DNA from: Haliotis rubra
Taxonomy: Eukaryota
Direction: 5' to 3'
Assembly (NCBI RefSeq): GCF_003918875.1
Contig: NW_025766592.1
Location: forward strand, 992,001 to 1,056,000
Length of the DNA stretch: 64,000 bases
Part shown: piece by piece, positions 1 to 64,000 of the stretch
Numbering within the stretch: position 1 is the stretch's first letter
Layout: each line of letters starts with the position of its first letter
Program-made: the position numbers and the translations under genes
The notes under the pieces: model-generated
Databases searched by the model: none
Told to the model about the DNA's origin: nothing
Seen by the model: the letters and a program-made list of their open reading frames with translations, nothing else

Positions 1-2053
1 CAGGGGCAAAAATAGAAAGTTAACGCAAGATTTTTTTGACGAATATCCTTGGCTAAGGCATTCTCCTCTCAACGATGGTGTTATATGTCTTCCATGTGTC
101 CTTTTCGCCACTGACGCAAATAAGGGTGCTTTGTATCTGTTTATATAAATGACTGGGCAAATATTGGAACATTGATAAAGTGGCACACTAATTTTGAATC
201 TCACCAAACTTGCTGTGAAAAATGCAGTAACTACAGAAAGGTTGCTTCTCACGTTCAAGATGATATTTGTACGCAACTGTCAAGTAGCCACAAAGCAACT
301 GTTGCTAAAAACCGCTCACTTCTGAAGACACTCATTGAAACACTCCTTCTGTGTTGAAAACAAAATATTGCAATTAGGGGGCACACAGAGGACAAAAGTA
401 ACTTCGTTGCTCTCTTGCAATACAGGGCGCAACATGATGTCATCCTGAAAAACCATTTGGACAATAGTTCAAATAACAACAAATATTTGTCACCATAGAT
501 TCAAAACGAGCTCCTTCACCTGTGTGCTTCACAAATAAAAACACATAGCAAATGAATGCAATGCTCAGGAATGTTTTTCCCTTATCGCTGATGAGGCCAC
601 TGATTCTTCAAACAAGGAACAGATTTCCCTTTCTGTCAGGTATGTGTCCGTTAATGAGGAAGGCCTCACGATATTAAAGAAAGTTTTGGGGGATTTGTTG
701 AAGCAGAAAGCACAAAGGCAGCACATTTAGCTGAGAAATTTCTTTCAGAATTAGGTGAACATGGCACTGATAAAAAAGATCATGAGAGGTAAGGGATATG
801 ACGGCGCTTCCAACATGAGTGGCCATGCCAGTGGTGTTCAGGCAATCATTAAACGCCAGCATCACGAGGTGTTCTATGTACACTGCAAGTCTCACTGCTT
901 GACCCTTGCGCTTGTGCACAGTTGTTCCATTAAGTCTGTCTAAATGATCATGTCCACAGTTCAGGATATCGCTTTTGCATTTTCATATTCTTCAAAGCGT
1001 CTTCTATTTTTCGCCAATGAGCTTGATTCCAATCAAGAAGTCAGAGAATCAATGGGCAGGAAAAAGAAGATCACTGAACTATGTGAAACACGATGGTCAA
1101 GCCGTGCAGATTCTCTATCAACTTTCAAAGCAGCATTTGATGTTATTGTAGATAGCTTGCAAGCACTGGAACAAACTGGGGATTCCAGAGCTAGATCGTT
1201 ACGATTGTCAATTCTCTCCTTTGACTTTATCGTTGGTCTCATTGTTTCACAACATGTTATGCATTACACTGTACAGTTATGGAAACTGTTACAGTCTGAT
1301 AGTATTGACTTATTTAAAGCTTCCAGTGAGGCGTCAGTTGTCATTAGCAGTCTCCGGCAAATCCGCGAGGAGGATGATATATGGCAAGAACTGTTTGACG
1401 ATGCCTCACAGCTTGCAAGAAAATATGAGCCGGCCCATAGTATGCCAAGGTGTGTTGTCCGTCACACAATGCGAGACAATGCCCCTGCTCCAACTCCAAT
1501 GCTGTACTGGTAGAGGAACTTATACTACCCTCTTCTTGACCACATCTCTCAGCAAATGAAGCAGAGGTTGATTGTACCTAATGGTCGCTTTGAAGCACAG
1601 TACTTAGTTCCTACCTCACTGCACAACCTTACTGATGAAATTGTAGGGAGGGTGTTTCAACAATTTGTTGAACTGCGTCAAAGCGACTTTGAGCAACTAA
1701 CGGTTGAAGTCCGACGGTGGAAATGCCGTTGGCAGGACATATCCATTGAAGAAAGGCCATCTTGTCTGCTAACAACTCTCGACTTTGCCAAGGCGGATCT
1801 TTATCCTCATATCCATATGGCCGTGAAAACCTTGGCGACAATGCCAGTGTCCTCTGCAACAGCTGAACGTTCTTTCAGTGCAGTGAGACGCATTAAGACT
1901 TACCTCATATCAACAATGTTAACTGGCAGATTGTCTGCACTTGCACTTATTCACGTACATCGTGATTTCGCGGTAGACATTGACAAAGTCATTGACATAT
2001 TCGCACAAGGTCAAACTAAACGACTGGCTCTTCTCTTTGACCAACATCTGTGA
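1..2053 (+). pseudogene. Decayed hAT-superfamily transposase (ZMYM1/P52rIPK-like), truncated by the window edge
   Basis: Motifs in order: TTF-type Zn finger (YPWL..S...DG..C.PC.LF), IADE(A)TD, GKGYDGASNMSG, VHCKSHCLTL, CETRWSSR, and C-terminal dimerisation domain (TMPVSSATAERSFSAVRRIKTYL..TM...RLSALALIHVH). In-frame stops at about 355, 496, 941 and 1511, plus frameshifts. Confidence 0.93.
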
Positions 2054-3635: not shown

Positions 3636-5164
3636 CACTAACGTCCAAAAGAAACGATACAAGGAATATTGTGACTATAACATAAAGAAACAACTCATAA
3701 TGGTTGAAAGGACATTTGTATTTGATAAACAGATGACTAATCACCATAGTTTTCGGAGATTCATCTAATTATCGATGACAACAAACTTGGAAAAAGTCTT
3801 GAAACAAGAGAGTGTCATTTGTCCGGTATTCGATCAGGTCAAAATGTATAGACACATCATGATACTGTGAATTTTATCAGAGCGATCAGTATCTGGTATG
3901 TCCACCTCGTGTATCAATACATGTGGCAACTCGACGTCGTACTGAGTAGACCAAACGCCGGATAACATGCACGGGTATCCTCCTCCACTCCTCTTGGAGA
4001 GCCTGAGCAAGCTGCTGTCTGTTTCCTGGAAGCACAGGTCTTGCACGCACTTGTCGTTCCAAATGGTTCCAGATATGCTCAATGGGCGACATGTCAGGTG
4101 ACCGAGCAGGCCAAGGCAACACGCTGACGTTATTTCTTTGGAGGGAATCTGTGGTAACACGAGCTGTATGTGGAGGGGCGTTGTCCTGTTGAAATATGAT
4201 GCGGTTTTGGTGTTGTTGCAAGAAAGGCAGGACAACTGGGAGCAGTATCTGGTCGATGTACCCTCGAGCGTTCAAATTACCATTCACCACAATGAGATCT
4301 GTCTTCACATCACCACAGATCTGACCCCAAACCATGACACCGCCTCCGCCAAATTGAACCACCTCCTGGAAGCAGTTACGTTGGTAACGTTCGCCTCGTC
4401 TTCGATAGACTCGAGCCCTGCCATCATTATGGAATATAAGGAACTTGCTCTCGTCCGAAACATGACCCTTTGCCAATGCCTGTTCTGCCATTGTCGAACG
4501 GTGCGTGCCCACTGCAGACGTCGACGTCGATGTTGATGCGTTAAAACTACGCCTCGAAAGGGTCTGTTAGCACGAATACCATGCCGTCGGAGTCGTCGTG
4601 CAACTGTCTGTCGGCTGACGATGTCCAAGACCAGTTGCTGCTGATGACGTCACAGGCAGGAAACGATTTCTGAGATGAAGCATCCGTAAATACCGGTCCT
4701 CATTCGGCTTGGTAACGGGAGGTCTCCCACGTCTGGGCCGCTCTGATGTCACACCTGTCTGCCTGTAACATTGTAGGAGTCTCGTGATAGTACTACGAGC
4801 GCAGCCCAAGGTTGTAGCAACGTGCTGGTGGGTGACTCCCATTTGCATCATTCCAAAGGCCCTCTCTCTTTCTTCCTGTGTTAATCGCGGCATGGTCGTT
4901 AATATATTTTGGATGGGATGATGTCAGTGAACAGCTGTACACTCATTTGATATGAATACCATGCACGTGATTCACGCTGCACGCGGGAGCAATTTTCATG
5001 CTTTAAGACAGTTAGCACGAAAACGTTGCGCCCAAACACAACTATTTTCATGATTCTTGACTGTTGAATTGAGGCGATTGTTTCCATGTCATATCTAATC
5101 AAAAATATATTTATTCAGAATATTTATATTTTTAATTTTGTATAGTTTCTTTTGAACGTTAGTA
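3636..5164 (-). mobile_element. Tc1-family DNA transposon, full length, transposase frameshifted
   Basis: 27-bp TIRs (CACTAACGTCCAAAAGAAACGATACAA at 3636; 3 mismatches at the 5164 end) and TA TSD at 3634-35 and 5165-66. Confidence 0.95.
3886..4893 (-). pseudogene. Tc1 transposase DD34E with two frameshifts
   Basis: MPRL..HTH..GRP (4893-), VSRQTVARRL..RLQWAR (frame 2), SDESKF..VMVWG..QQDNAPPH..WPARSPDMSPIEH..GGHTRY (frame 3); 34 residues between the second D and E; shifts near 4620 and 4460. Confidence 0.93.
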
Positions 5165-43599: not shown

Positions 43600-44380
43600 T
43601 TCAAAATGTGTTTCTGGTGTATGATCATTGAACAATGTTAACTAAACTGTGAATTAAAACTAAAATTAAAATCAAAATTAGAGAAACAGTACGACTGTTG
43701 ACGATTCCAAAGCAGCTCTGGAACCGGACATTGTAATACGGTTGTCTATACCCATAAACGTTGTTGGCTGTTTGACGCCGCACTCAGCAATATTCCAACT
43801 ATATGGTGGCGATCTGACATAACTGAGTCTTGACCAGACAATCCAGTGACCAACAGTATGAGTTTGGATCTACGCAATTGGGATGACATGTATCACCCAA
43901 GCGTTTCTGATGTCGTTTGAGGCAACGTCTTGCCCTTCCGTAGTAGGTATCCATGAAACTTCCTTACAAACAATAAGAAATTATCCAGAAAAGTTTTATG
44001 TTTCAAAGTCTTACAACTTCAAAGTGCATTTAAAAGTGTGGACATCTAGTGTACTTTCTTGCTTAACGCCTCACTCAGAAATATTTCGGCTTTACCGTAC
44101 AAACCTGTGGCTAATATGAACAATGACCAAACGTCTGACCACACGATCGACCAAAGTCGCTATATACGACAGCCACAGTTGCTGAGGAGAAGTTCTAACC
44201 TAACACCCCATGGTCCAAATAATATTTGAACCGTGCCATCGATAGATGCTTGATGAAACAAAACAAAATATTCGAAATTAATATATCTTGCATCTTTGAC
44301 ATATTGTGACAGTAGTATATTGGCAAGACATCTCGGCAGACAATGAATCATTTTGACCATGTTTCATGTAGCTGTCGACG

Positions 44381-44453
44381 ATGTATACCTGTGTAGCTGT
44401 CGCTGTCCTGGCCGTCCTTGTCGCCTACGTCAACGGAGCGCCTGTAGATCCTG
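44381..44453 (+). CDS. Small secreted protein, coding exon 1 (signal peptide MYTCVAVAVLAVLVAYVNG-APVDP)
   Basis: Acceptor TGTAG at 44371, ACGATG start context, hydrophobic h-region with VNG|AP cleavage site, phase-1 donor G|GTACGT. Confidence 0.8.
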
Positions 44454-44696
44454 GTACGTGATGGTTTAATGTCGCGGTTAAGACAATTGCAATTAAAACA
44501 TGACATACGTACACACCGTGCGTGCGTGAGCGTGCGTGTGTGTTTACTATAGTGCTAGGCCACTGAGCTATCATGCCGCAGGTTGAACGTAAAAACCCTA
44601 TTCAGACACAATACACTGAAGTATTTTATCCCCTTATGCTGAGCGCCAGTCAGGGTAACAATAAGTACAATCTTTCCTGGTGATTTGACGCAGATG

Positions 44697-44867
44697 ACTG
44701 ACTCACTGACTGAGTTTGGTTTAACGCCGCTTTTAACAATATTCCAGCAACATCACGGCGGGGGACACCAGAAATGGGCTTCACACATAGTACCCATGTG
44801 GGGATTCGAACCCGGGTCTTCGGCGTGACGAACCAACGCTTTAACCACTAGGCTACCCCACCGCCCC
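44697..44867 (-). mobile_element. Family-A SINE (intronic)
   Basis: 11-bp TSD GACGCAGATGA. Confidence 0.93.
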
Positions 44868-46043
44868 GACGCAGATGATAGGACCATGACATGTATTGCA
44901 CTGTTTGATCTCTTCACCACTTACTTTGTGTCTGAAGTTAGTCCAACATATTGCTACGTAATCACGTCGCAAGTGCACGTCACAAGTTATGAATACACAA
45001 TTATGTTTGTTAAAACTGCGATCCATGGCTGGGTGTGGCCTGTAAATAATCTGGACCAGACAAACTGGTGATTGACATTACGAGCATCTCCCATGTCGAA
45101 TGGAAAGTTAACGATAGAAACGACACCACCGAAACATTAGGTCTCACCTTAAGCTAAGTTCAACCCAGATTACCCGCGAAGGCTGAGACACAACGGTTTC
45201 CTAATCTTTAGATTCTGGTTTAGGATCAGGGGTTCCTTTCAGGAAGCAACCTTTACTAAGGTTAACCTTAACTTGTTTCTTTAACATTGCACTAAGGTTA
45301 CCTTAGTGACTTACGATCACCTTTGAGGTTTGTGAAAGGAGATCAAGGTTCTGTTCCAGCTTCAGTTTAACCCTCCACTGGTGGTACATGAACATATACA
45401 TATTTATGAAAATTCAAATATGACTAATCTCAAGATCAGCGCTTCTTTCTCACTAACGTTGAGTAAAAGACAACACATTTGGTCCAGTTTTTAAAAAAAC
45501 ATTTTTATCTCTATCTACCTTGTGGGTGGGTCAGGTCTACAGAATTTGGCTAAATCTGGCAACAAGTAGTGTTGATTTTAGTAATATATAGAATTCTTTC
45601 TTTGTATAAGAGCCTAGTATCTGAAAAGAAAAGGAATCTCATCTCATCCTGAAAGCGTACCACAGTGTTGACAATGTCAACGTCAAAGTTTGTTCTCTTG
45701 GTGTATTCAGTGTTTTTATGTGCATACAATTGCCCAGTGTTATTGAGACTTTGGCTTGGGGGCATAACTGAAGCAACTATTTACATACGTAATTCAATCT
45801 GAGCAATACACGAAACAGTATTCAAATTCAGTGCGATAAAGGGTTCAACAATATCTATGCATGAATAATTTATAATCACATGTTAGTTGAACAGCATTAC
45901 GATTTGTCACATGTGTTTAATGTTCTTAGTTGTTAATTTTGCTCTGCTGAAGAGGCAACATTCCTCCATAATACCCCACTCATACAACATCAGTAGCCAA
46001 CTTGGATTTTGTCTAATTCTGCTCAAATGCGTTTTCCTTTCAG

Positions 46044-46060
46044 GTCCATCGTCTGGCGAG
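46044..46060 (+). CDS. Small secreted protein, coding exon 2 (17-nt micro-exon, GPSSGE)
   Basis: TTTTCCTTTCAG| ... GAG|GTAAGT; converts phase 1 to phase 0 exactly as the flanking exons require. Confidence 0.75.
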
Positions 46061-46252
46061 GTAAGTCGCCTGCTGTCTAAATGATATATCAATAACGCAA
46101 TTTTGCTAAATAACGAATTTGCAAATGCGATGGGGAAAATCTTAATAATATGATAAACTGAAAATATAGAAATGTTTAACGTCGTTTTGAACAGTATTCC
46201 AGTAATATCACGGCGCCTCAGCTTAATGCTGAAAGAACATGCTGCAGGCTTT

Positions 46253-46825
46253 TGGTCATTCGTAACTACTCGCCTCTTTCCGTGAGCTACAAGAAGACTC
46301 GTACCCCATTCGTAACTACTCGTGTCATTCCGGCAAACCGGATGGTGTCTCGTACCCTTCTTGTTGTAGTCTTCTTGTAGGTCACGGAAAGAGGCGAGTA
46401 GTTACGAATGACTCGTACCCCTATCGTACGCCATTATTGCCAAGAATCATGGCAAACCAATCGAATCGCCAGTAGTAAAACGCATTTCGAAGCATGAAAA
46501 TGGCGGCACCGTTGAACTTTGAAACTTCGCTAACTATGCAAAGAACAATTTAAACAAACTTTGAGCTGACGGATCAGCAACTTTCAACACTGAAACATAT
46601 TTACAAAGGGGATGACTGTGTTTTGTCCACGGGATATAGCTATAGGATGTTCTTGGGGTAACCATGTTTGGACATTCAGAGTTATCTTTCCTTGGTACTA
46701 GTACTAGACTATTTTCATCTCCATGCCCGTTTGCGCTTAGACAGGGCTTAGTCGTAAACATGGCCACGAGAGGGGTACAAGACGCCATCTGGCTTGCCGG
46801 ACTGACACGAGTAGTTACGAATGGC
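46253..46825. mobile_element. DNA-transposon relic with reiterated direct and inverted CATTCGTAACTACTCG motifs
   Basis: 46255-46298 is inverted at 46368-46412; 46303-46356 is inverted at 46772-46824. Confidence 0.65.
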
Positions 46826-47306
46826 TTTCGGTGAAGCCCACGTTCATGGTGCTTACGAATGAAGAAACGTAACTGGGCGAACGAAGGATCACGGCTTTCT
46901 GGCTTGCTCATGGGGAGGCAACTCTGCATAGCGAATTGCACGTGTCACTTAAACTGTGAACAGTTGTCATGTATCATGCTTTGAAAAGCAACCGAGGGGT
47001 TAAAGGTTATTGCTAACTCTGCTTTTTTAAACCATAATCTGTTTAACCTTCGGTCGTCTCTGTGTCGATATGTGCATATAGATCTCATCATAAAGTAAAT
47101 GTACCACGATGAACTGAAATAACCGTCCGATGCTGATGCTGTTAACCCTTAGTTTGCTTTCACTTGGTCGGCGAGTGAGTGAGTATGGTTTTACGCCGTT
47201 TTCAGCAATATTCCAGCAATATCACGGCACTCCCATATGTGTCACTTGGTCGGGAAGTACATGATAAAGTCTACAGGTAACACTGGTTCATCTTCTGCGA
47301 CTACAG

Positions 47307-47501
47307 TCACAAACTCGTTTGATCGTTGACAAGGTTGACCAGATGCGAAGGCCGCGGCCGACACCGGACACTGTGATTGGACACTACCCCATCAAGATGA
47401 TCCTTGACCTGCTGAGAGGTCAGGGTGGCTTCGCTCCATCTCTCCAGAGGGCCCGGAAGGACAGAAATGAAATCACTGAAAACGAACTCCTCAAAATGCA
47501 G
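47307..47501 (+). CDS. Small secreted protein, coding exon 3 (SQTRLIVDK...NELLKMQ, 65 aa)
   Basis: CTACAG acceptor, 195 nt open in phase 0, GC-richer codon-like composition, CAG|GTTGAT donor. Confidence 0.75.
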
Positions 47502-48234
47502 GTTGATATTTCCTTTTGATGATCTGGTAGTTTTGACGAATGTTTATGGTAAATTTCTCCAGCAACGCGGGTCCGTTCGATGGAATATTCCTCACATGAT
47601 ATTGCTGCATGTTGATTCCCATATTGAAACAATACGTTAGCCGGAAATCAGTCCGTAAAACAACTCAACATGAAACCAAGAAACAACAAAGGATTGTGAG
47701 ATGGTTTCCAATTGCATTCTGAAGGTAACTAAGTTTACAAGTCAGTACATATCACCATATATGGGAACTACAATGGTAGTACAAAATGTAGGAGTACGTT
47801 TAAAGGCAGTAATATTCACCTAACTACAACACTGGTCAAGTTCCGAACTCGGCCTTGGCTGAGTATCAAGGGTGCAAAGTGATCTGCACACCACTGTTGG
47901 TCTCTTTGTGACGTGAGATGTACGAACCAAAAGCGCGCCTTACAGAAAGTGTAACATAATATTCTAGACTATGTTGGAAAGTTCCATGTACAAATACCTT
48001 GTAGAGTAGTTGTACCTGCTAGAATTTGTAATCTAAATATTGCGTAGCGCTGTCCCATCTCCCTCCACCACCGAAAGTCAAAAGTAATACACTAGGTATA
48101 TTGCACCCGTCTGAATAAATCAATACTTCAGTAGTCTGTCCCTGAACTATTTTATTATGCCATCTGCCCAACCCTTTATAAAATGCAGAAGCCCTAAATG
48201 AAACAAATTATAGCTCTTTTACTTCTGAACTTTC

Positions 48235-48563
48235 CACCCGCGAAGATCCGGGTTAAAATAGCGATCTTCAGTAAAGTTTTCGTGTTATCCAAAGCCAGTC
48301 AAATTGCATATTTTCTTGGAAAACGACATATATGATTGTTTGTTTGGGTTAGAATTGGTTTTCGGTAACCTATGCCTGTCGTAAGAGGCGACTAAAGGGA
48401 TCGGGTGGTCAGGCTCGCTGACTTGGTTGACTCATGTCATCGGTTCACAATTGCGTAGATCGATGCTCATGCTGTTCATCACTGGATTATCTCGCCCAGA
48501 CTTATTTACAGACCGCCGCTATGTAGCTGGAATATTGCTCAGTGCAGCGTAAAATTAAACTCT
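48235..48563 (+). mobile_element. Family-B SINE with duplicated 5' end
   Basis: 12-bp TSD TCTGAACTTTTC. Confidence 0.88.
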
Positions 48564-50272
48564 CTCTGAACTTTTCATCTCATTGGGGCACATTTTCTTT
48601 TTGAATGGAGCTTTCCAAATAATCAAACTACATTGTATATTTATATATTGAGACTAGTTGTTAGTCAACTAGTTCCACCACCCATATAATACGTCAGGTC
48701 CATGTCACTGGGACGAAACGAGTGTCACTATAATATAATGTTAACTTGTTCCGCTCTTTATCGTTCGGCAATCTCAGCGCTTTTGTCATCTGGGAGACGG
48801 GAAACAAGTGTAACTACTAGTATTGAGTGGGTGGGGTTCCAGCAATATCACAGCGGGGGACACCCGAAATGGGCTTCATACATTTCATACATTATACCCA
48901 TGCGGGAAATCGAACCCGGGCCTTCAGTGTAACAAGCGAACGCTTTAACCAATAGGCTAGCCCACCTTTCTAAGTCTATCTGGACGCAGAGATTAAGGAC
49001 TATTAAGTTTGCAAATCATCGAATAGTACTTAAGAAAAAATAACAGATATCACTAAACAAAAACTGGAAAACTTTACATGTCTAATTAATTATGTGTGAC
49101 TGATTCAAGACATGTAAATAAAATTAATATTGTGTTCAAGCATCTCAACAAATTATGCAATGTATTAAATCATAACCTCATCTGTCATGGTATTTTAAAG
49201 TCTGTGACCACGACAAAGCCTTTAAGCTCATAATTCTCCTCACGTACACAAGATTACATTATGATAAATAGTGACGAGCGGAAATTGTGATAAATAATGA
49301 CGAGCGGAAATTGTATCTCATGAGCGTTCTTTAAAACTCATTAAGCCAAGCCCAAGCTGTTATTTAATGCACATGCATTTGACTTAATGGATGCCAAATG
49401 TCCCCGAGACAATTTTATTAAGTCGTTAAATGTATTTTTAAATGGAACATTGAAGTTTTACCCCCAAAAGCTTTGTGTACAGTTTCAACTGAACAACAAT
49501 CTCAATAAGCCATAACAAAATAGAAATACGTCTATTTTTCTCCCAACCTTAACATCGCCCTATACACACAGCTCAATTCCGATTGTCTGTTTTATTGTTT
49601 TTTATTTAAATGCATTCAATTCCTATAGCCTATAGGCTGCGTGAGATTAAAGGGGATTTGTGGCGCTGCATATGGTAAAATGAATAAATACTCCAATCAA
49701 AATCGATATATGTACCCTGTGTACTTTTTAAGGTGATGAGAAATGTCGTAATGTTGATCTGCGTTCACCTCATCAACGCTGCTTTTCCTTTATCCGGTCA
49801 CTGCCTGACGTGGGTTAGACACACTGTCGCCATTTCTTTGAATTATGCATCGAACAAAGTTATTACCTCAGGGTTTTCAATAAATTGATTTTTTATCTGA
49901 TGTGTGACGGTGATCAATTGTGTGGTTTTTTTTCGAATTCCGTTATCCTCTTTTCAAAATCAAATTCATCCACTGTGATACCGTTTCATTTTCTCATTGT
50001 GGTCACGTTATGATAATGGGATCATGTAAGTAAACTGAAGTACAAAAGAAAGTACACATTTGTCTGTTTGGGTTAGGGGTTTTTCAAGTAAGAAAACAAA
50101 ACAAAACAGCAGATTGTGAATATTTAGAAACGTGTGTGACTTGTGACATGTGACTAACAAGTCTGATAATCTCAAGGCTTTTTTCTGTAATTCTGTAGTG
50201 TCAGATAATCTCACTACTTTCTTCGTACTTTCTACGTCAGTTAACGTGTACCTGGCTTGCCCCAAAATGACG

Positions 50273-50735
50273 ACCCGTTAAGATCCGGGTTACGATTGAT
50301 CTTCAGCAACCCATGCTTGTCGTAAGTGGCGACTGACGGGATCGGGTGGTCAGGCTCGCTGACTTGGTTGACACATGTCATCACATCTTAGTTGCGTAGA
50401 TTGATGCTAATGCTGTTGATCACTGGATTATCTGGTCCAGACTCGATTACGGCGTGGATAATCGCGTCTGGGCAAGACAAACCTAGTGATCCTGTGACGT
50501 CCCTCACAACCATGTTACAGGGCCTGAAAACAACGGCCATATTTCTCATGGAAAAAGAAATGGACCCGATCTGCAAAGTAATGTTAACGCTACCTCGATC
50601 GTCTATGTTGAAATTTCGTATCCCAAATACGTAGATCTATGTTCATGCTGTTGATCACTGGAGTGTCTGGTCCAGACTCGATTATTTCCACACAGCCGTC
50701 ATATATATGGAATATTGCTGAGTGAGGTGTTAAAG
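50273..50735 (+). mobile_element. Composite family-B SINE with a non-SINE insert
   Basis: SINE 50273-50449, foreign sequence 50450-50615, overlapping SINE 3' part 50616-50735. Confidence 0.8.
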
Positions 50736-50846
50736 CGTGGGAGAAACGACCACCTTAGACCATTTTGTTGAACGGACCGTGAGATGAACTTGTACCGTTC
50801 ACTGATTTTTTTTTCTTGTACACAAAACTCTTTCACATTTTTGCAG

Positions 50847-50900
50847 TTGGAGTCCATTCTTCAAGGAATTGCGCAGTTTCCGATCAAAATGAACTTTTAA
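50847..50900 (+). CDS. Small secreted protein, last coding exon (LESILQGIAQFPIKMNF*)
   Basis: TTTTTGCAG acceptor, phase 0, TAA at 50898-900, donor G|GTAACA right after; FPIKM echoes YPIKM in exon 3. Confidence 0.68.
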   Translation: MESILQGIAQFPIKMNF

Positions 50901-52204
50901 GGTAACAATTATTATATAATTCGTCAGATACACTTATTGTTAGAACTGTATGCTGATCTATGCACTTGCAATTGCCTACATACAGGGGCTAACGGTGACC
51001 TGGTGATCAATGCCGCATAAACTTGCCAATAGTTGTCTCCAGAAACCGTGTCAGGATACGCTGATTCCAGATTCATGGTTCTGTCCAATTATGATCCTTG
51101 GTTGATTTTTATCGTACCAATGTTAGACAGTATGCATGTATCCTGTGTCAATTCGGACGGTTCTCCTGTAGTTTGCTGTTAGGCTGTGGTGTACACAGAT
51201 CGTCCCAAACAACTAAACCCAACTCACTCACTAACTTACTCCTTTGTTCTGTTTCCCACGCCGTCACATGGCATGGCACACACCTCAGAGTCACTGGTAG
51301 CCTAGAGGCTGACTCTGACCGGGTTCAGTCACACACATGGGTCTGATTCGTGACACTTTATCTTGGGTGTTAACAATATCGGTTGACTCGGCTTTGAGTC
51401 GTACTGTGTTTGAGTCGAATGTCCTATGTTGATGGTATCTCAGATAAAAGCCGGCATTACTCCAGACTAGGACAAACCGCCATTCACGCACATGCGCACG
51501 CTCGTACGCACGGTAGTACTCACGCATGCACGTCGCTATAAAATGAAACAAAAATGGAGTACCTTGAACGTTAAGCCCCATTCCCCCTCTGCTCAACTAG
51601 TTTTTGCATAAAAACAGATATAATATCACACTGATGGATCTACATAATTATTCATACAATATGATACAGATAATATTGTACAACCCAGTTTCAATATTTT
51701 ACGTGAGCTGATCAGGAGAGAATAAATTGCTTATCTCATGATATGTCACTTGAGATGATATTAACTCGAGTGAATCATCCCGTCATTAACCATGTACATA
51801 TGTTATTCAGCTGTTGTTTATAGTCAGTATATTGACTTCATATAGGCCACCGTGGAGTAAATTCTTATAAATGCATGATATTGAATAAGATTATGTGTGC
51901 CAGTGGTAGTCCAACTTGGACACTACAGAACTGTGTAGTTGCGAATGCACGTAGGTAGAGCACCCGGCTTGTGACACCTGTTACTAAGCAACGAAGACAA
52001 AGATTCGATGGTGAAAATGTGTGTGACAATTAGATCTTTCTCGTTGCAGTCTCGAACACAGTGAACAGGTTTAATAATAATAATGACGTGACAAGCAAGT
52101 GACGTCACACAACCCGGCGACTTAGAATTAGGTTTCACAAGATTGGACTGACCATTGGGATTGTTATGTTCTTCAACAAGTATAAGCAATATTTCCTGGA
52201 TTAG

Positions 52205-52855: not shown

Positions 52856-55800
52856 ACATTATATACCCTTTATCTATATAATATATGTCGGTCATGGGAT
52901 ACTGGATAACGCACTCACGTCCACGTGTACTCACAATCATTATACATGTATATCCTCTATCTATATAATATATTGCAGTCATGGGATACTGGATAACGTA
53001 CTCACGTCCATGTGTACTCACAATCATTATATATCCTCTATCTATATAATATATGGCGGTCATGGTATACTGGATAACGTACTCACGTCCACGTGTACTC
53101 ACAATCATTATATATCCTCTATCTCTATAATATATGGCGGTCATGCATGGGATACTGGATAACACACTCACGTCCACGTGTACTCACAATCATTATACAT
53201 GTATATCCTCTATCTATATAATATATTGCAGTCATGGGATACTGGATAACGTACTCACGTCCATGTTTACTCACAATCATTATATATCCTCTATCTATAT
53301 AATATATGGCAGTCATGGGATACTGGATAACACACTCACGTCCACGTGTACTCACAATCATTATATATCCTCTATCTATATAATATATGACGGTCATGGG
53401 ATACTGGATAACGTACTCACGTCCACGTGTACTCACAATCATTATATATCCCTATCTATATAATATATATTGGCGGTCATGGGATACTGGATAACGTACT
53501 CACGTCCACGGATACTGGATAACGTACTCACGTCAATCATTATATATCCTCTATCTCTATAATATATGGCGGTCATGGGATACTGGATAACACACTCAAC
53601 GTCCACGTGTACTCACAATCATTATATATCCTCTATCTATATAATATATATGCGGTCATGGGATACTGGATAACGTACTCACGTCCACGTGTACTCACAA
53701 TCATTATATATCCTCTATCTATATAATATATGGCGGTCATGCATGGATACTGGATAACACACTCACGTCCACGTGTACTCACAATCATTATATATATCCT
53801 CTATCTATATAATATATTGCGGTCATGGGATACTGGATAACGTACTCACGTCCACGTGTACTCACAATCATTATATATCCTCTATCTATATAATATATGG
53901 CGGTCATGGGATACTGGATAACGTACTCACGTCCACGTGTACTCACAATCATTATATATCCTCTATCTCTATAATATATGGCGGTCATGGGATACTGGAT
54001 AACGTACTCACGTCCACGTGTACTCACAATCATTATATATCCTCTATCTATAAAATATATGGCGGTCATGGGATACTGGATAACGTACTCGTCCACGTGT
54101 ACTCACAATCATTATATATCCTCTATCTATATAATATATGGCAGTCATGGGATACTGGATAACGCTCTTACGTCCACGTGTACTCACAATCATTATATAT
54201 CCTCTATCTATATAATATATGGCAGTCATGGGATACTGGATAACGTACTCACGTCCACGTGTACTCACAATCATTATATATCCTCTATCTATATATATAT
54301 GGCAGTCATGGGATACTGGATAACACACTCACGTCCACGTGTACTCACAATCATTATATATCCTCTATCTATATAATATATGGCAGTCATGGGATACTGG
54401 ATAACGCACTCACGTCCACGTGTACTCACAATCATTATATATCCTCTATCTATATAATATATGGCAGTCATGGGATACTGGATAACACTCACGTCCACGT
54501 GTACTCACAATCATTATATATCCTCTATCTATATAATATATGGCAGTCATTGGATACTGGATAACGCTCTTACGTCCACGTGTACTCACAATCATTATAT
54601 TTCCTCTATCTCTATAATATATGGCAGTCATGGGATACTGGATAACACACTCACGTCCACGTGTACTCACAATCATTATATATCCTCTATCTCTATAATA
54701 TATGGCAGTCATTGGATACTGGATAACACACTCACGTCCACGTGTACTCACAATCATTATATATCCTCTATCTATAAAATATATGGCGGTCATGGGATAC
54801 TGGATAACGTACTCACGTCCACGTGTACTCACAATCATTATATATCCTCTATCTATATAATATATGGCAGTCATGGGATACTGGATAACGCTCTTACGTC
54901 CACGTGTACTCACAATCATTATATATCCTCTATCTATATAATATATGACGGTCATGGGATACTGGATAACGTACTCACGTCCACGTGTACTCACAATCAT
55001 TATATATCCTCTATCTATAAAATATATGGCGGACATGGGATACTGGATAACACACTCACGTCCACGTGTACTCACAATCATTATATATCCTCTATCTATA
55101 TAATATATGGCGGTCATGGTATACTGGATAACGCTCTTACGTCCACGTGTACTCACAATCATTATATATCCTCTATCTATATAATATATGGCGGTCATGG
55201 GATACTGGATAACACACTCACGTCCACGTGTACTCACAATCATTATATATCCTCTATCTATATAATATATGGCGGTCATGGGAAACTGGATAACGCTCTT
55301 ACGTCCACGTGTACTCACAATCATTATATATCCTCTATCTCTATAATATATGGCGGTCATGGGATACTGGATAACGCACTCACGTCCACGTGTACTCACA
55401 ATCATTATATATCCTCTATCTATAAAATATATGGCGGTCATGGGATACTGGATAACGTACTCACGTCCACGTGTACTCACAATCATTATATATCCTCTAT
55501 CTATATAATATATGGCAGTCATGGGATACTGGATAACGCTCTTACGTCCACGTGTACTCACAATCATTATATATCCTCTATCTATATAATATATGACGGT
55601 CATGGGATACTGGATAACGTACTCACGTCCACGTGTACTCACAATCATTATATATCCTCTATCTCTATAATATATGGCAGTCATTGGATACTGGATAACA
55701 CACTCACGTCCACGTGTACTCACAATCATTATATATCCTCTATCTATAAAATATATGGCGGTCATGGGATACTGGATAACGTACTCACGTCCACGTGTAC

Positions 55801-57962
55801 TCACAATCATTATATATCCTCTATCTATATAATATATGGCAGTCATGGGATACTGGATAACGCTCTTACGTCCACGTGTACTCACAATCATTATATATCC
55901 TCTATCTATATAATATATGGCAGTCATGGGATACTGGATAACGTACTCACGTCCACGTGTACTCACAATCATTATATATCCTCTATCTATATAATATATG
56001 GCAGTCATGGGATACTGGATAACACACTCACGTCCACGTGTACTCACAATCATTATATATCCTCTATCTATATAATATATGGCAGTCATGGGATACTGGA
56101 TAACGCACTCACGTCCACGTGTACTCACAATCATTATATATCCTCTATCTATATAATATATGGCAGTCATGGGATACTGGATAACACACTCACGTCCACG
56201 TGTACTCACAATCATTATATATCCTCTATCTATATAATATATGGCAGTCATGGGATACTGGATAACGCTCTTACGTCCACGTGTACTCACAATCATTATA
56301 TTTCCTCTATCTCTATAATATATGGCGGCATGGTCATGGGATACTGGATAACACCCCATTCTCTATAATATATGGCACGTCCACGTGTCCACACTCACAA
56401 TCATTATATATCCTCTATCTCTATAATATATGGCGGTCATTGGATGCTGGATAACACACTCACGTCCACGTGTACTCACAATCATTATATATCCTCTATC
56501 TATATAATATATGGCGGTCATGGGATACTGGATAACGCTCTTACGTCCACGTGTACTCACAATCATTATATATCCTCTATCTATATAATATATGACGGTC
56601 ATGGGATACTGGATAACGTACTCACGTCCACGTGTACTCACAATCATTATATATCCTCTATCTATAAAATATATGGCGGACATGGGATACTGGATAACAC
56701 ACTCACGTCCATGTGTACTCACAATCATTATATATCCTCTATCTATATAATATATGGCAGTCATGGTATACTGGATAACGCTCTTACGTCCACGCGTACT
56801 CACAATCATTATATATCCTCTATCTATATAATATATGGCGGTCATGGGATACTGGATAACACACTCACGTCCACGTGTACTCACAATCATTATATATCCT
56901 CTATCTATATAATATATGGCGGTCATGGGAAACTGGATAACGCTCTTACGTCCACGTGTACTCACAATCATTATATATCCTCTATCTATATAATATATGG
57001 CGGTCATGGGATACTGGATAACGCACTCACGTCCACGTGTACTCACAATCATTATATATCCTCTATCTATAAAATATATGGCGGTCATGGGATACTGGAT
57101 AACGTACTCACGTCCACGTGTACTCACAATCATTATATATCCTCTATCTATATAATATATGGCAGTCATGGGATACTGGATAACGCTCTTACGTCCACGT
57201 GTACTCACAATCATTATATATCCTCTATCTATATAATATATGACGGTCATGGGATACTGGATAACGTACTCACGTCCATGTGTATTCACAATCATTATAT
57301 ATCCTCTATCTATATAATATATGACGGTCATGGGATACTGGATAACGTACTCACGTCCACGTGTACTCACAATCATTATATATCCTCTATCTATAAAATA
57401 TATGGCGGACATGGGATACTGGATAACACACTCACGTCCACGTGTACTCACAATCATTATATATCCTCTATCTATATAATATATGGCAGTCATGGTATAC
57501 TGGATAACGCTCTTACGTCCACGCGTACTCACAATCATTATATATCCTCTATCTATATAATATATGGCGGTCATGGGATACTGATACTGGTCCATACTCA
57601 CAATCACTCACGTCCATAACGTGTCCACTCACAATCATTATATATCCTCTATCTATATAATATATGGCGGTCATGGGAAACTGGATAACGCTCTTACGTC
57701 CACGTGTACTCACAATCATTATATATCCTCTATCTATATAATATATGGCGGTCATGGGCATACTGGATAACCTCTACTCACGTCCACGTACTCTCACAAT
57801 CATTATATATCCTCTATCTATATAATATATGGCGGACATGGGATACTAGATAACGCACTCACGTCCACGTGTACTCACAATCATTATATATCCTCTATCT
57901 ATATAATATATGGCGGTCATGGGATACTGGATAACGCACTCACGTCCACGTGTACTCACAAT
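52856..57962. repeat. 81-bp satellite array, about 63 copies
   Basis: Unit CACAATCATTATATATCCTCTATCTATATAATATATGGCGGTCATGGGATACTGGATAACGTACTCACGTCCACGTGTACT. Confidence 0.98.
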
Positions 57963-60562: not shown

Positions 60563-61650
60563 TTACTTCAAGAAAGTCCTCGGTTGTGAAATTAGTCTGG
60601 AATTTGAACCGTTAGATACAGAAGACTCAGAACAGAATGACGAAGGGGTTTCGACACTTGAAGATTCAGATTCTTCATCTGAAGTTTCAGACAACAAATT
60701 AAATTTCACAGTGTTCAGTCCAAACATATCGTTCGTCTTCATGGACAAGATTTTATCCTTCATCCTCCCAAAGCTCTCATTATTTCTTCCCTTGGCTTTA
60801 TGTGCGGTGTATATACATACGCCTAACACTAAACCTGCAAACAGCACAACACCAAGGACGATCAGACCTGTGTACAACTTGTACTCCAGCATCAAGTTGT
60901 ACAACCGTTTATACAAGGGCGGAGGTGGCGTTACGGCAACGTTGTACCACGCTGTATGCCACGTTCTTTTTGTCACCGGATCTGTCACTGCACATGTCCA
61001 ATTTCCTGTGGAATTACTCCGTACATTTTTAACAATGACTTTCTCACTTGTGTTCGTCTTTACAACTGGTACATATTCTGTATTATTCAGAAACCACTTT
61101 AAGCTTGTCTCGGGGTACATCTGAGACAACGCATTACTGTTGCAGGTGAGCTCCAGTGCCTCTGTCTCACGGACACTTTTTGTGGGGCCTTCTGTCTTCA
61201 CTGTCAAAGAATAGATCCCAACCGTCTTAAAATTCTTCTTGCTGTATTCCATCAAACACACATACACACCGGTGTCCTTGAAGTTTACATCCCTGATGGA
61301 AAAGGTCCCCTTGAACAAAAACATCCGGGATGCATCCATGACAACAGGGTACTCGTTAACGGACCAATGGTATACAGATTTGGGGTACTCGGAAGCTATA
61401 TTCTGCGAGACTTCGTTTTTACAGGGAAACTCCACGCTGTCACCTTCGGTCTTCACGAAGTCGTAATGCATTTTCTTGATGAATTTCACCCACAGCTTCT
61501 CGGTTTCTGAGGACAGGCCGTCATCTCTGAACTTTTGAAACATCTTTTTGTTTTTAAATTTATCATACAGCCAGAACCGTTTTTCCCTTTGTAACGTTTT
61601 ATCACCGGAAAGGCCGTCTTTGTCGCCAGTATGGGCATCACCTCGGATTC
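60563..61650 (-). CDS. Type I membrane protein with two Ig-like domains (large coding exon; N-terminus unresolved)
   Basis: Ig1 (VEFPC..YHW..DTGVYVC), Ig2 (LELTC..LKWF..STGNWTC), PPPP stalk, TM LYTGLIVLGVVLFAGLVLGVCIY, Ser/Glu-rich tail; phase-1 acceptor TTACTTCAG ending at 61651. Confidence 0.9.
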
Positions 61651-64000
61651 CTGAAGTAACACAAAATGGATATTTTATTGACAATTGGTGAAATCACAAT
61701 GAAGATAATAATCACAACTGTTATCATGACAGGGAGACTTAATGGATCAATACGTGTTAGGCGATGCGTCACGGTGGTAGTTCATACGCTCAACTACATA
61801 TACCCTGAATGAGTCACTGCTTTAAAAAAACACGTGTCTGGTCTACTTTATTAGATAATCAGTCAATCAAAGCACGTTTGGGTCCAACGAACCCATGCAT
61901 TTTTTATCTACCATCAACGCGATGGGTAATACAGATTTTAATGCATTACTCTATTGCTGCTTTACACTATGGCACCGGTCCAGTCGCCATTTTGCAGTCA
62001 ACTTAACAATTGGCCCACCGGATAATGATCATGGATTTGGAACGATAAGACAATCACCCTTGATAGTTATGAAGTTGTTTTGCACTGTTTGTCATTTTAC
62101 TCGAGAAATAGTGATAGAAAACAGCGGTGCTGTACGGGTGTCTGGCTCTGAGTACAGACATATTAGGACAGTGTAATTTAGAGATTCGTGATCGAGAAAA
62201 TGTTATTTATCAAGGGCAAATAAAATAACTCCTTCAAAACATTTTCAACACTAAAATAAGTTTTTGAAATATTGTGCGAACAGGCTCGGTGTACTGACGA
62301 TTCCCATGGTATAAAAAGGCAAAAGGAAATTCAGGCCATTATATGGATAGATAAGCCTACGCCTTGACTGTACCTCTGATACCATCTAAGTTCGTGGTAT
62401 AGTTCGTGACATGTCACTCCCAACAATATTAACATTTACAGCTCCCTATGAGTAGAGTGTTCAAGCAAGCTTTGGGAAGGCCCTTTGTCAGTTTCTATAT
62501 GAATAAGACCATCTATTCCAATGTGCTATCACCAGTACCACAGCACCGGAACAGCAAGTGACAGATGAGATTCCGTGTGATGATGATGATGATGATGATG
62601 ATGATGTAGAGGTTGCTGCTCTTGTACGTACATTTACATTTTAGTGGATGGCATCTTATCTCTCTGAGAAACATCAGTGTGTTCGTACTGGTCTGTAGAG
62701 CTCTGAGAATGAAACCCTAAATCATGGAGTGCCCCAGTGATCTGTTATTGGTTTGTTACTCTTCATATTATATACGGGCCATGCTGCAAACAGTACCAGA
62801 AACCACAGGATCTCACACCATTCTTACGCTGATGATAATCCCCAGGACATACCACCTGTCCAGTATATAAACGATTGTCAGATGCTTCGCTAAAAGATCA
62901 AAGGCGCCCACAATACTTTAACAGACGATAGAGTACATTCAATGCATTAAGTCACACCGTATTGACGTCACTATGCCATTCAAGTCTGCTCCCGCGTAAT
63001 GAAACGTACCCTTGGTAACAGACGTCACTATGCATGTCAGTTGTCATTGCCAAGTACAGTCAATGACTGTTGCCAATTTTCGTTATTTTACGAGGGGCTG
63101 GGGGGGAACTTGCTGGTAGAACACCAATCTAATCACCAAGCGTGAGCAGTGAAATATTAAATTTCACTCGTGCAACTTGCACACCTGGCTGTTCTGCAAG
63201 AGTTTTCCAAATTCCTACGATGAATGTGGAAAAGCTTTGAGGAGAGTGTATTGCAGGTGTGGCATGCATCTGGAAGATTTGTGGTCTCTCCTTCAAGAAC
63301 CACTGGGACTGCACACAGAAAGAACAAAACTATACTCGAGCATGCTCATTTTACAAAGATATCAAACAAAGTGTCACCCGACTCTTGTTAGATCAGGTTT
63401 ACATTCAGGGCCTCAGTAAAGCTTTCAAACTATTGTATGGCTGGAATTTCAAAATGTGATGGATCAGTGACAATATTATGTCCAAAGTTATTCCTTATTT
63501 TGACTTTACCATACCCTCCCGGTTGTTGTCAGGTAACAATTGGCCAGCCTTTCATATGTTTAAGACGGGTTTCACCCGTGGGGCAGGCACCTTTTCGCTG
63601 ACATCTGGTGTCATCACTGTTTGATAGAGTGATTAATAAAACAATGCTCTGTGATCGTGTCATGTCAATCACTAGATTGTCTGGTCAAGACTGGATGTAC
63701 AGACCGTCGTTATACAGCTGTAATATTGCTGAATGTGGCACATCATCACATCATCATAATATGGTCGGAATTGTACAATCGACCCTGCCTTCAGCAGAGA
63801 TTTCTGATAGATACGGAAAGGTTTAGTCGCTTCTATTAAATTTAAAAAACATTCTCCAACAAAAATCTGTGTACAAAAATATTCCTAATTTCCTATTCTG
63901 AGCAAACACCATTTCGTCCTTGTTGTTAAATTTTAGGAATGTATTGCTGAACACCAGTAGACATGGCACTTCACGAGGCAAATTCCAAGATTAATTGTAC

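What the first reader, a model, noticed from the sequence alone, without database searches (positions are those of the whole stretch)
44381..50900. Hidden four-exon gene for a 112-aa secreted protein with a micro-exon and repeated (Y/F)PIKM motif
Seen: phase-consistent splicing of 44381-44453, 46044-46060, 47307-47501 and 50847-50900 gives MYTCVAVAVLAVLVAYVNG|APVDPGPSSGESQTRLIVDKVDQMRRPRPTPDTVIGHYPIKMILDLLRGQGGFAPSLQRARKDRNEITENELLKMQLESILQGIAQFPIKMNF. It has a signal peptide, no mature Cys, basic clusters (RR, RARK) and an internal echo IGHYPIKM / IAQFPIKM. Inference: a lineage-specific neuropeptide/hormone-like precursor, or a secreted shell, mucus or gamete protein. I do not recognise the family.
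Basis: partly seen in the sequence, partly recalled or inferred. Interest (0 to 1): 0.7.

Follow-up and report, generated by a model that had tools for sequence, protein, structure and literature searches.

The report
Annotated abalone orphan secreted-protein gene
The four-exon gene is real, but it is already in the public blacklip abalone annotation as an uncharacterised 103-residue secreted protein that has been found only in abalone and whose function is still unknown.

Summary
The gene is not hidden. The window pieces tile RefSeq XP_046571402.1 (uncharacterized LOC124279603, Haliotis rubra, 103 aa) exactly.

There is one difference. Orthologue models in H. rufescens and H. cracherodii (105 aa each, 61-62% identical by BLASTP) use the same join. 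They also keep the frame, the six residues that include the micro-exon, both [YF]PIKM motifs and an invariant RARKDR cluster.

No other relative turned up. I searched 1.84 billion protein representatives, a three-sequence profile, Pfam, PDB sequences and the rest of this genome, where the gene is single copy. The AlphaFold2 model is poor (pLDDT 51) and predicts three short helices after the signal peptide.

No RNA reads were available. The only runs found are genomic DNA of a relative about 97% identical.

My best reading is an abalone-restricted, fast-diverging, Cys-free secreted polypeptide of about 9.5 kDa, possibly cut at RARKDR into two peptides that each carry one motif. Secretion and processing are inferred, not shown. 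It is not FITZAP, and I found no family link to PDH or any other named hormone. Interest is modest.

The parts
44381..44453 (+). Coding exon 1. It starts at the ATG, holds the predicted signal peptide (44381-44437, residues 1-19, with V-N-G|A-P fitting the -3/-1 rule) and five mature residues, and ends in phase 1 at donor CTG|GTACGT.
   Evidence: It equals residues 1-24 of XP_046571402.1 plus the first base of G25. The signal segment is 14-15/19 identical to the two Californian species.
46044..46060 (+). 17-nt micro-exon (residues G25 in part, then P-S-S-G-E), with acceptor TTCAG| and donor GAG|GTAAGT.
   Evidence: It matches residues 26-30 of the RefSeq protein. The orthologues have the same length there, with no gap in alignment columns 25-30.
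47307..47333 (+). It is in frame behind a good CAG acceptor but is missing from every annotated protein, so it is at most an alternative 3' splice site.
47334..47501 (+). Coding exon 3 as annotated (residues 31-86). It holds VDQM, PRPT, the YPIKM motif at 47385-47399 followed by an amphipathic helix, and the invariant RARKDR cluster at 47448-47465. Donor is CAG|GTTGAT.
50847..50900 (+). Coding exon 4 (residues 87-103 plus the TAA stop). It holds the end of the long amphipathic helix and the second motif, FPIKM, at 50877-50891.
51721..51726 (+). The only AATAAA between the stop codon and the downstream satellite. It is a candidate poly(A) signal, which would give a 3' UTR of about 0.8 kb. This is inferred only.

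Best explanation
This is the single-copy Haliotis rubra gene LOC124279603. It is a four-coding-exon gene for a 103-residue pre-protein known only from abalone.

Shown here:
- The exon structure, apart from which exon-3 acceptor is used.
- Exact identity to the RefSeq protein.
- Orthologues in two other Haliotis species that keep the frame and a set of conserved islands.
- No detectable relatives elsewhere.

Inferred:
- Residues 1-19 act as a cleaved signal peptide (cut after V-N-G). This releases a Cys-free, mildly basic polypeptide of 84 residues and about 9.4 kDa. It is mostly helical or disordered.
- In the secretory pathway a furin/PC-type convertase may cut at the invariant multibasic cluster R-A-R-K-D-R (RxRK or RxxR). 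That would give an N-terminal fragment of about 50 residues, HYPIKM followed by an amphipathic helix. It would also give a C-terminal amphipathic helix of about 29 residues ending in QFPIKM.
- The two invariant [YF]PIKM motifs would be the contact points for an as yet unknown extracellular partner. On this reading the protein is a lineage-specific secreted signal (hormone-, pheromone- or gamete-type ligand), not an enzyme or structural protein.
For: Gene reality:
- Canonical splice sites and consistent phases.
- Window pieces tile XP_046571402.1 exactly.
- H. rufescens LOC124133897 and an H. cracherodii protein are 61-62% identical by BLASTP over full length. The alignment has only two single-residue gaps, which keep the frame, and 62 invariant columns. 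These include VIGHYPIKMILD, RARKDR and QFPIKM.
- A 17-nt exon in a gene with no protein homologues is unlikely to come from ab initio prediction. That suggests transcript support behind the RefSeq model (inference).

Secretion:
- A hydrophobic core of about 15 residues is followed by V-N-G|A-P.
- The signal segment is better conserved than the mature part: 15/19 against 54/84 identical.

Processing and ligand idea:
- RARKDR is invariant, while the flanks vary.
- Two segments with high helical hydrophobic moment lie at residues 46-56 and 80-92.
- AlphaFold2 predicts helices at 49-58, 65-73 and 79-95.
- The Atlas language-model neighbours are mostly small prohormones (DH31-like, PDH, NPY, UTS2B, galanin, PBAN). 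All score below 0.9, so they are only a lead.

Restricted range and fast divergence:
- phmmer against 1.84 billion representatives found only the query's own cluster and one chance hit.
- The three-sequence profile found nothing new.
- There is no paralogue in the 1.38-Gb genome.
- H. rufescens and H. cracherodii already differ at 11 of 105 residues.
Against: - No RNA-seq, peptide or tissue evidence could be obtained. The three runs found are genomic DNA of a relative about 97% identical.
- Signal-peptide cleavage was judged by rule only, with no predictor. The n-region has no basic residue.
- There is no amidation Gly.
- The conserved motifs are not bracketed by basic residues, unlike classical multi-copy neuropeptide precursors.
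- The RR at residues 35-36 is not conserved.
- In the model RARKDR lies inside a predicted helix (65-73). It could be a binding patch and not a cleavage site.
- PIKM and RARKDR are absent from the 12 supplementary files of the H. discus hannai ganglia transcriptome/peptidome paper.
- The structure model has low confidence (pLDDT 50.7).
Confidence: 0.45

Rival explanations
1. It is an unprocessed small helical secreted protein of the reproductive system (acrosomal, egg-coat-associated or spawning-related). It would evolve fast under sexual selection, like abalone lysin, sp18 and FITZAP.
For: - The range is restricted to Haliotis.
- The signal peptide is conserved while the mature region diverges: 54/84 identical between H. 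rubra and H. rufescens, and 76/86 between the closely related H. rufescens and H. cracherodii.
- The mature chain is Cys-free.
- The hydrophobic residues of helix 79-95 are spaced in a heptad-like pattern (my reading of the sequence; helix).
- FITZAP shows that abalone sperm proteins can be small, lineage-specific and furin-processed (PMC6952181).
Against: - No expression data are available.
- No sequence similarity to any known abalone gamete protein was detected by phmmer.
- Net charge is only +1 to +2. FITZAP is strongly anionic and lysin and sp18 strongly cationic.
- I could not measure a genome-wide baseline for divergence between these species, so 'fast' rests on general knowledge.
Confidence: 0.2
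2. It is a classical neuropeptide or peptide-hormone precursor expressed in ganglia. The conserved islands would be the bioactive peptides acting on a GPCR.
For: - It has a signal peptide, an invariant multibasic cluster and small size.
- The Atlas feature neighbours are prohormones, at scores of 0.82-0.85.
- By eye, the C-terminal ...SIL..G....FPIKMN loosely resembles crustacean PDH ...SILGLPKVMN. I recalled the PDH sequence from memory, so this is a lead only.
Against: - No Pfam hit at E up to 10, including Pigment_DH and other hormone families.
- There is no C-terminal Gly for amidation.
- The motifs are not flanked by cleavage sites.
- The motifs are not found in the H. discus hannai ganglia peptidome supplements.
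- Real neuropeptide families usually extend across molluscs, and this one was not detected outside Haliotis.
Confidence: 0.2
3. It is a small membrane-anchored (type II, uncut signal-anchor) protein and not a secreted one.
For: - The hydrophobic stretch runs for about 16 residues and has no charged n-region.
- AlphaFold2 models residues 3-17 as one helix.
Against: - Sixteen residues is short for a membrane span.
- V-N-G|A-P is a good -3/-1 cleavage context and is invariant in the three species.
Confidence: 0.08
4. It is not a functional protein: a transcribed but non-coding locus whose ORF was annotated by pipeline, or a chance chain of ORF pieces.
For: - No RNA or protein evidence was obtained here.
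- There are no homologues outside one genus.
- The structure model has low confidence.
- Exon 3's open frame of 83 codons would not be remarkable on its own.
Against: - The frame is kept across all four exons in three species, despite about 35% residue divergence and two single-residue gaps that keep the frame.
- There are sharply conserved islands and an invariant duplicated motif.
- Splice sites are canonical at every border.
Confidence: 0.07

Closest known systems
RefSeq XP_046571402.1, uncharacterized protein LOC124279603 (Haliotis rubra), with orthologues LOC124133897 (H. rufescens) and an unnamed H. cracherodii protein
   Same: It is the same gene. Exons 1, 2 and 4 and the 3' 168 nt of exon 3 match residue for residue. 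The orthologues are 61-62% identical by BLASTP over full length.
   Different: No function or family name is attached to any of the three records.
FITZAP / sp6, the small abalone acrosomal protein (PMC6952181)
   Same: Both are abalone-specific, small, secreted through the ER, Cys-poor and fast-evolving. FITZAP is reported to be trimmed by furin and carboxypeptidase B.
   Different: FITZAP has two exons, an ORF of about 6 kDa, an N-terminal poly-Asp tract and a net charge of -6 to -16. This protein has four coding exons, a mature chain of about 9.4 kDa, no poly-Asp and a net charge of +1 to +2. No sequence similarity was found.
Small invertebrate prohormones (PDH/PDF, DH31, NPY/NPF type)
   Same: All share the overall build: a signal peptide, a precursor of about 100 residues, a basic cluster ahead of a C-terminal helical peptide, and neighbourhood in language-model feature space.
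   Different: There is no Pfam match, no amidation signal and no relatives outside Haliotis. The Atlas scores are below the level at which that tool's own calibration treats a hit as more than a lead.
Frey / C11orf94 (PF15878)
   Same: It is the top Atlas feature neighbour (0.88 for the whole protein, 0.79 for the mature part), and both are small proteins.
   Different: Only 135 and 104 of 256 features are shared, in the range of chance hits. There is no Pfam hit. Frey is a chordate family. I treat this as chance.

Membership tests
Haliotis LOC124279603 orthologue group (unnamed) | Full-length sequence identity with the RefSeq protein and collinear orthologues | tested here: met
   Window pieces tile all 103 residues of P0001 exactly. 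P0003 and P0004 align over full length at E 4e-34 and 4e-30.
Classical neuropeptide / prohormone precursor | N-terminal cleaved signal peptide | tested here: inconclusive
   The hydrophobic core and V-N-G|A-P fit the -3/-1 rule and are conserved. No signal-peptide predictor was available.
Classical neuropeptide / prohormone precursor | Conserved basic cleavage sites bracketing the conserved peptide(s) | tested here: inconclusive
   One invariant RARKDR cluster is present. The RR at residues 35-36 is not conserved. The [YF]PIKM motifs are not directly flanked by basic residues.
Classical neuropeptide / prohormone precursor | Amidation signal (Gly before a basic site or the stop codon) | tested here: not met
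   The C-terminus is ...KMNF-stop or ...KMHL-stop, and there is no G-K/R at RARKDR.
Classical neuropeptide / prohormone precursor | Expression in neurons or endocrine cells, with processed peptides detected | not testable with these tools
   No RNA runs were found and the reads laid were genomic DNA. The motifs are absent from the supplements of PMC6523705, which is weak negative evidence from another species.
FITZAP / sp6 | Two-exon gene, N-terminal poly-Asp tract and a strongly anionic mature peptide | tested here: not met
   This gene has four coding exons, no poly-Asp and a net charge of +1 to +2.
Pigment-dispersing hormone (PF06324) | Match to the family profile, and an amidated 18-residue C-terminal peptide after KR | tested here: not met
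   No Pfam family matched at E up to 10 for any of the three proteins. There is no amidation Gly.
Abalone lysin / sp18 | Detectable sequence similarity to the lysin/sp18 helical-bundle family | tested here: not met
   phmmer over 1.84 billion representatives returned only the query's own cluster and one repetitive chance hit, which looks to me like a phage tail fibre. The model is too poor for a fold comparison.

The most novel reading that the evidence does not exclude
The gene founds an abalone-only family of secreted signalling polypeptides. A convertase would cut at the invariant RARKDR and release two helical peptides, each carrying one invariant [YF]PIKM motif. These would act as a species-tuned hormone, pheromone or gamete signal. 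The fast change of the residues around the fixed motifs would reflect co-evolution with a receptor.
Probability: 0.2. Interest if true: 0.55.

Novelty: new member of a known kind. Interest (0 to 1): 0.27.

Why it matters
Abalone are a textbook system for fast-evolving secreted reproductive proteins, and they are farmed animals whose spawning and growth control is poorly understood. A single-copy, genus-restricted secreted polypeptide with a fixed duplicated motif in a fast-changing background is a reasonable candidate for a lineage-specific signal.

As it stands, this is an already annotated but uncharacterised gene. The scan adds three things:
- a description of its conserved islands;
- a possible alternative acceptor 27 nt upstream of the annotated exon-3 start;
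- evidence that it has no relatives outside Haliotis in very large protein collections.

Tried and rejected
For full-length searches I used the public RefSeq protein P0001 that the word search returned.

RNA evidence
- The look-up of sequencing runs gave three runs of unknown kind. Laid on 45000-50990, they are genomic contigs of a relative about 97% identical. They run straight from intron into exon 3 (47215-47588, no gaps) and show no intron-skipping joints. They therefore say nothing about splicing.
- In exon 3 that relative differs at 47314 (Thr to Ile, inside the 27-nt extension), 47420 (silent) and 47473 (Ile to Asn). Not all differences were listed, so I computed no rate.

Relatives and families
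- P0002, the only other phmmer hit (E 3e-4), is a 569-aa repeat protein that looks to me like a phage tail fibre. Its score comes from four repeats. I rejected it as chance.
- Pfam and PDB sequences (best hit eL14 at E 0.19) gave nothing.
- Atlas hits were all below 0.9, and below 0.8 for the mature part of the H. rufescens orthologue. I kept them only as a weak 'small prohormone-like' lead. I rejected Frey.
- I rejected FITZAP/sp6 on gene structure, charge and the poly-Asp tract.
- I noticed a PDH-like C-terminal resemblance by eye. No profile supports it.

Structure
- AlphaFold2 with the three-sequence alignment gave pLDDT 50.7. I ran no fold search because a model this poor gives meaningless matches.

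Literature
- Full-text searches for HYPIKM, QFPIKM, LOC124279603, LOC124133897 and XP_046571402 found no relevant paper.
- The H. laevigata genome paper has no supplements held.
- The H. discus hannai peptidome supplements lack the motifs.

Other
- Rfam found nothing in 40-56 kb.
- A search of the scan's earlier findings by words found nothing.
Full report
**What is in the sequence**

- Exon 1 (44381-44453) opens with ATG in an A-at-minus-3 context and ends at CTG|GTACGT.
- The 17-nt exon (46044-46060) lies between TTCAG| and |GTAAGT.
- Exon 3 ends at CAG|GTTGAT (47501).
- Exon 4 (50847-50900) follows TTGCAG| and ends with TAA.

The phases add up: 73 + 17 = 90 nt, then 195 nt, then 54 nt. I searched each exon separately by reference.

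**The gene is already annotated**

The word search with exon 3 returned a single protein, P0001. It is NCBI XP_046571402.1, 'uncharacterized protein LOC124279603 [Haliotis rubra]', 103 aa.

A substring check shows that window pieces tile it exactly:

| Window piece | P0001 residues |
|---|---|
| 44381-44452 | 1-24 |
| split codon GGT | G25 |
| 46046-46060 | 26-30 |
| 47334-47501 | 31-86 |
| 50847-50897 | 87-103 |

So the window is blacklip abalone. The genome handle, 1.378 Gb in 2855 contigs, fits that.

The only difference is the start of exon 3. RefSeq uses the AAG| acceptor at 47334.

By sequence alone the upstream site looks at least as good:
- It has 13/20 pyrimidines, against 11/20 for the downstream site.
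- It has CAG where the downstream site has AAG.
- It has a TTCAT branch-like site with its A at 47290.

A minor 112-aa isoform therefore cannot be excluded. All three annotated species join ...GE|VDQM... (GQ|VDQM in H. cracherodii), so 103 aa is the supported product.

**Orthologues and conservation**

A search with the full RefSeq protein found H. rufescens LOC124133897 and an H. cracherodii protein. Both have 105 aa and are 61-62% identical by BLASTP over full length.

The alignment has only two single-residue gaps, which keep the frame. It has 62 invariant columns, and these fall in islands:
- the signal segment;
- VDQM and PRPT;
- VIGHYPIKMILD;
- AP.L.RARKDR;
- NEL.K.QL;
- QFPIKM.

The six residues that include the micro-exon have the same length in all three species. 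Both [YF]PIKM motifs are invariant.

Identity is 15/19 in the signal segment against 54/84 in the mature part for H. rubra versus H. rufescens. The two Californian species already differ at 11 of 105 residues. From general knowledge of abalone divergence that is fast. I could not measure a genome-wide baseline here.

An open frame kept across four exons at this divergence, with sharp conserved islands, argues strongly for a translated gene.

**No relatives elsewhere**

- phmmer of P0001 against 1.84 billion cluster representatives gave only its own cluster and one 569-aa repeat protein that looks to me like a phage tail fibre. That protein's E of 3e-4 comes from four repeats, so I treat it as chance.
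- A profile of the three sequences found nothing more among 5.8 billion clusters.
- Pfam gave no family at E up to 10.
- PDB sequences gave nothing better than E 0.19.
- Exon 1 DNA, the exon 3 protein and the profile each hit only this locus in the genome. The gene is single copy.

**Protein properties**

- The mature chain, after a predicted cut at V-N-G|A-P, has 84 residues, or 86 in the Californian species.
- It weighs 9.4-9.8 kDa, has pI 8.4-9.2 and contains no Cys.
- Two segments have high helical hydrophobic moment, at residues 46-56 and 80-92.
- AlphaFold2 on the three-sequence alignment gave a poor model (pLDDT 50.7, pTM 0.19). It predicts helices at 49-58, 65-73 and 79-95.
- The Atlas's own model is equally weak, with pLDDT 0.52.
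- I ran no fold search on such a model.
- The Atlas feature neighbours of the whole protein are mostly small prohormones, but all score below 0.9. Neighbours of the mature part of the H. rufescens orthologue fall below 0.8. These are a lead only.

**Expression evidence**

None could be obtained. The single run search returned three runs of unknown kind from one sample.

Laid on 45000-50990, they are genomic contigs of a relative about 97% identical. One contig runs unbroken from intron through exon 3 into the next intron (47215-47588), and no joint matches an intron.

In exon 3 that relative has three listed differences, none of which breaks the frame:
- one silent change, at 47420;
- Ile to Asn, at 47473;
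- Thr to Ile inside the 27-nt extension, at 47314.

**Most likely mechanism**

Shown: a conserved, single-copy, abalone-restricted coding gene with a signal-peptide-like N-terminus.

Inferred: the chain is translocated into the ER and cleaved after G19. A furin/PC-type enzyme may then cut at the invariant RARKDR cluster. That would give two fragments:
- an N-terminal fragment carrying HYPIKM and its amphipathic helix;
- a C-terminal helix of about 29 residues ending in QFPIKM.

The fixed motifs would be the contacts for an unknown partner. I give this secreted-ligand reading about 0.45.

Within that reading, the data cannot separate a hormone-type role from a reproductive or pheromone-type role. 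A classical neuropeptide precursor is weakened by several points:
- there is no amidation signal;
- no basic residues flank the motifs;
- no relatives outside Haliotis were found;
- the motifs are absent from the H. discus hannai ganglia peptidome supplements.

FITZAP/sp6 is excluded by gene structure, charge and its poly-Asp tract.

**Verdict**

'Hidden' and '112 aa' are not. The function remains open.

This is an annotated orphan gene of a familiar kind, a small lineage-restricted secreted protein. It is moderately interesting as a candidate abalone-specific signal, but it is not surprising to a specialist.

Noticed in passing
window 52857-57962: A 5.1-kb satellite of an 81-bp unit lies about 2 kb downstream of the gene. 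It has about 63 copies at 90-93% identity, with higher-order periods of 162 and 243 bp. Because 81 is a multiple of 3, it yields ORFs of 415-637 codons open on both strands. These draw spurious Pfam hits with zero matched stretches.
   Followed up: partly
window 60563-61684 (-): A single 373-codon open frame with several immunoglobulin-type domains (Ig_3 at E 2.7e-12, I-set, ig). It is probably a large exon of a neighbouring Ig-superfamily gene on the minus strand.
   Followed up: no
window 1556-2053 (+) and 3886-4512 (-): Transposase remnants: a hAT C-terminal dimerisation domain (E 2e-7) and a DDE_3 endonuclease (E 3e-10).
   Followed up: no
window 45200-45400, 46200-46800, 47000-47230, 48200-48900, 50200-50800: The introns of the gene are packed with very high-copy repeats. 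Word depths reach 10^5-10^6 in the relative's DNA contigs. Many joints link 48259-48477 to 50300-50658, which suggests that two intron-3 segments are copies of one repeat family.
   Followed up: no
window 44344-44361 and 50898-50906: Two out-of-frame upstream ATGs (44344 and 44359) lie just before the start codon and would be uORFs if transcribed. The stop codon is followed directly by a donor-like AAG|GTAAC, so a 3'-UTR intron is possible.
   Followed up: no
window 45000-50990 versus runs X1-X3: The only public runs that hold this stretch are genomic DNA from one 2018 sample. They differ from the window by roughly 2-4% in introns, with small indels. That points to a sister species or a divergent population, not the sequenced individual.
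   Followed up: partly
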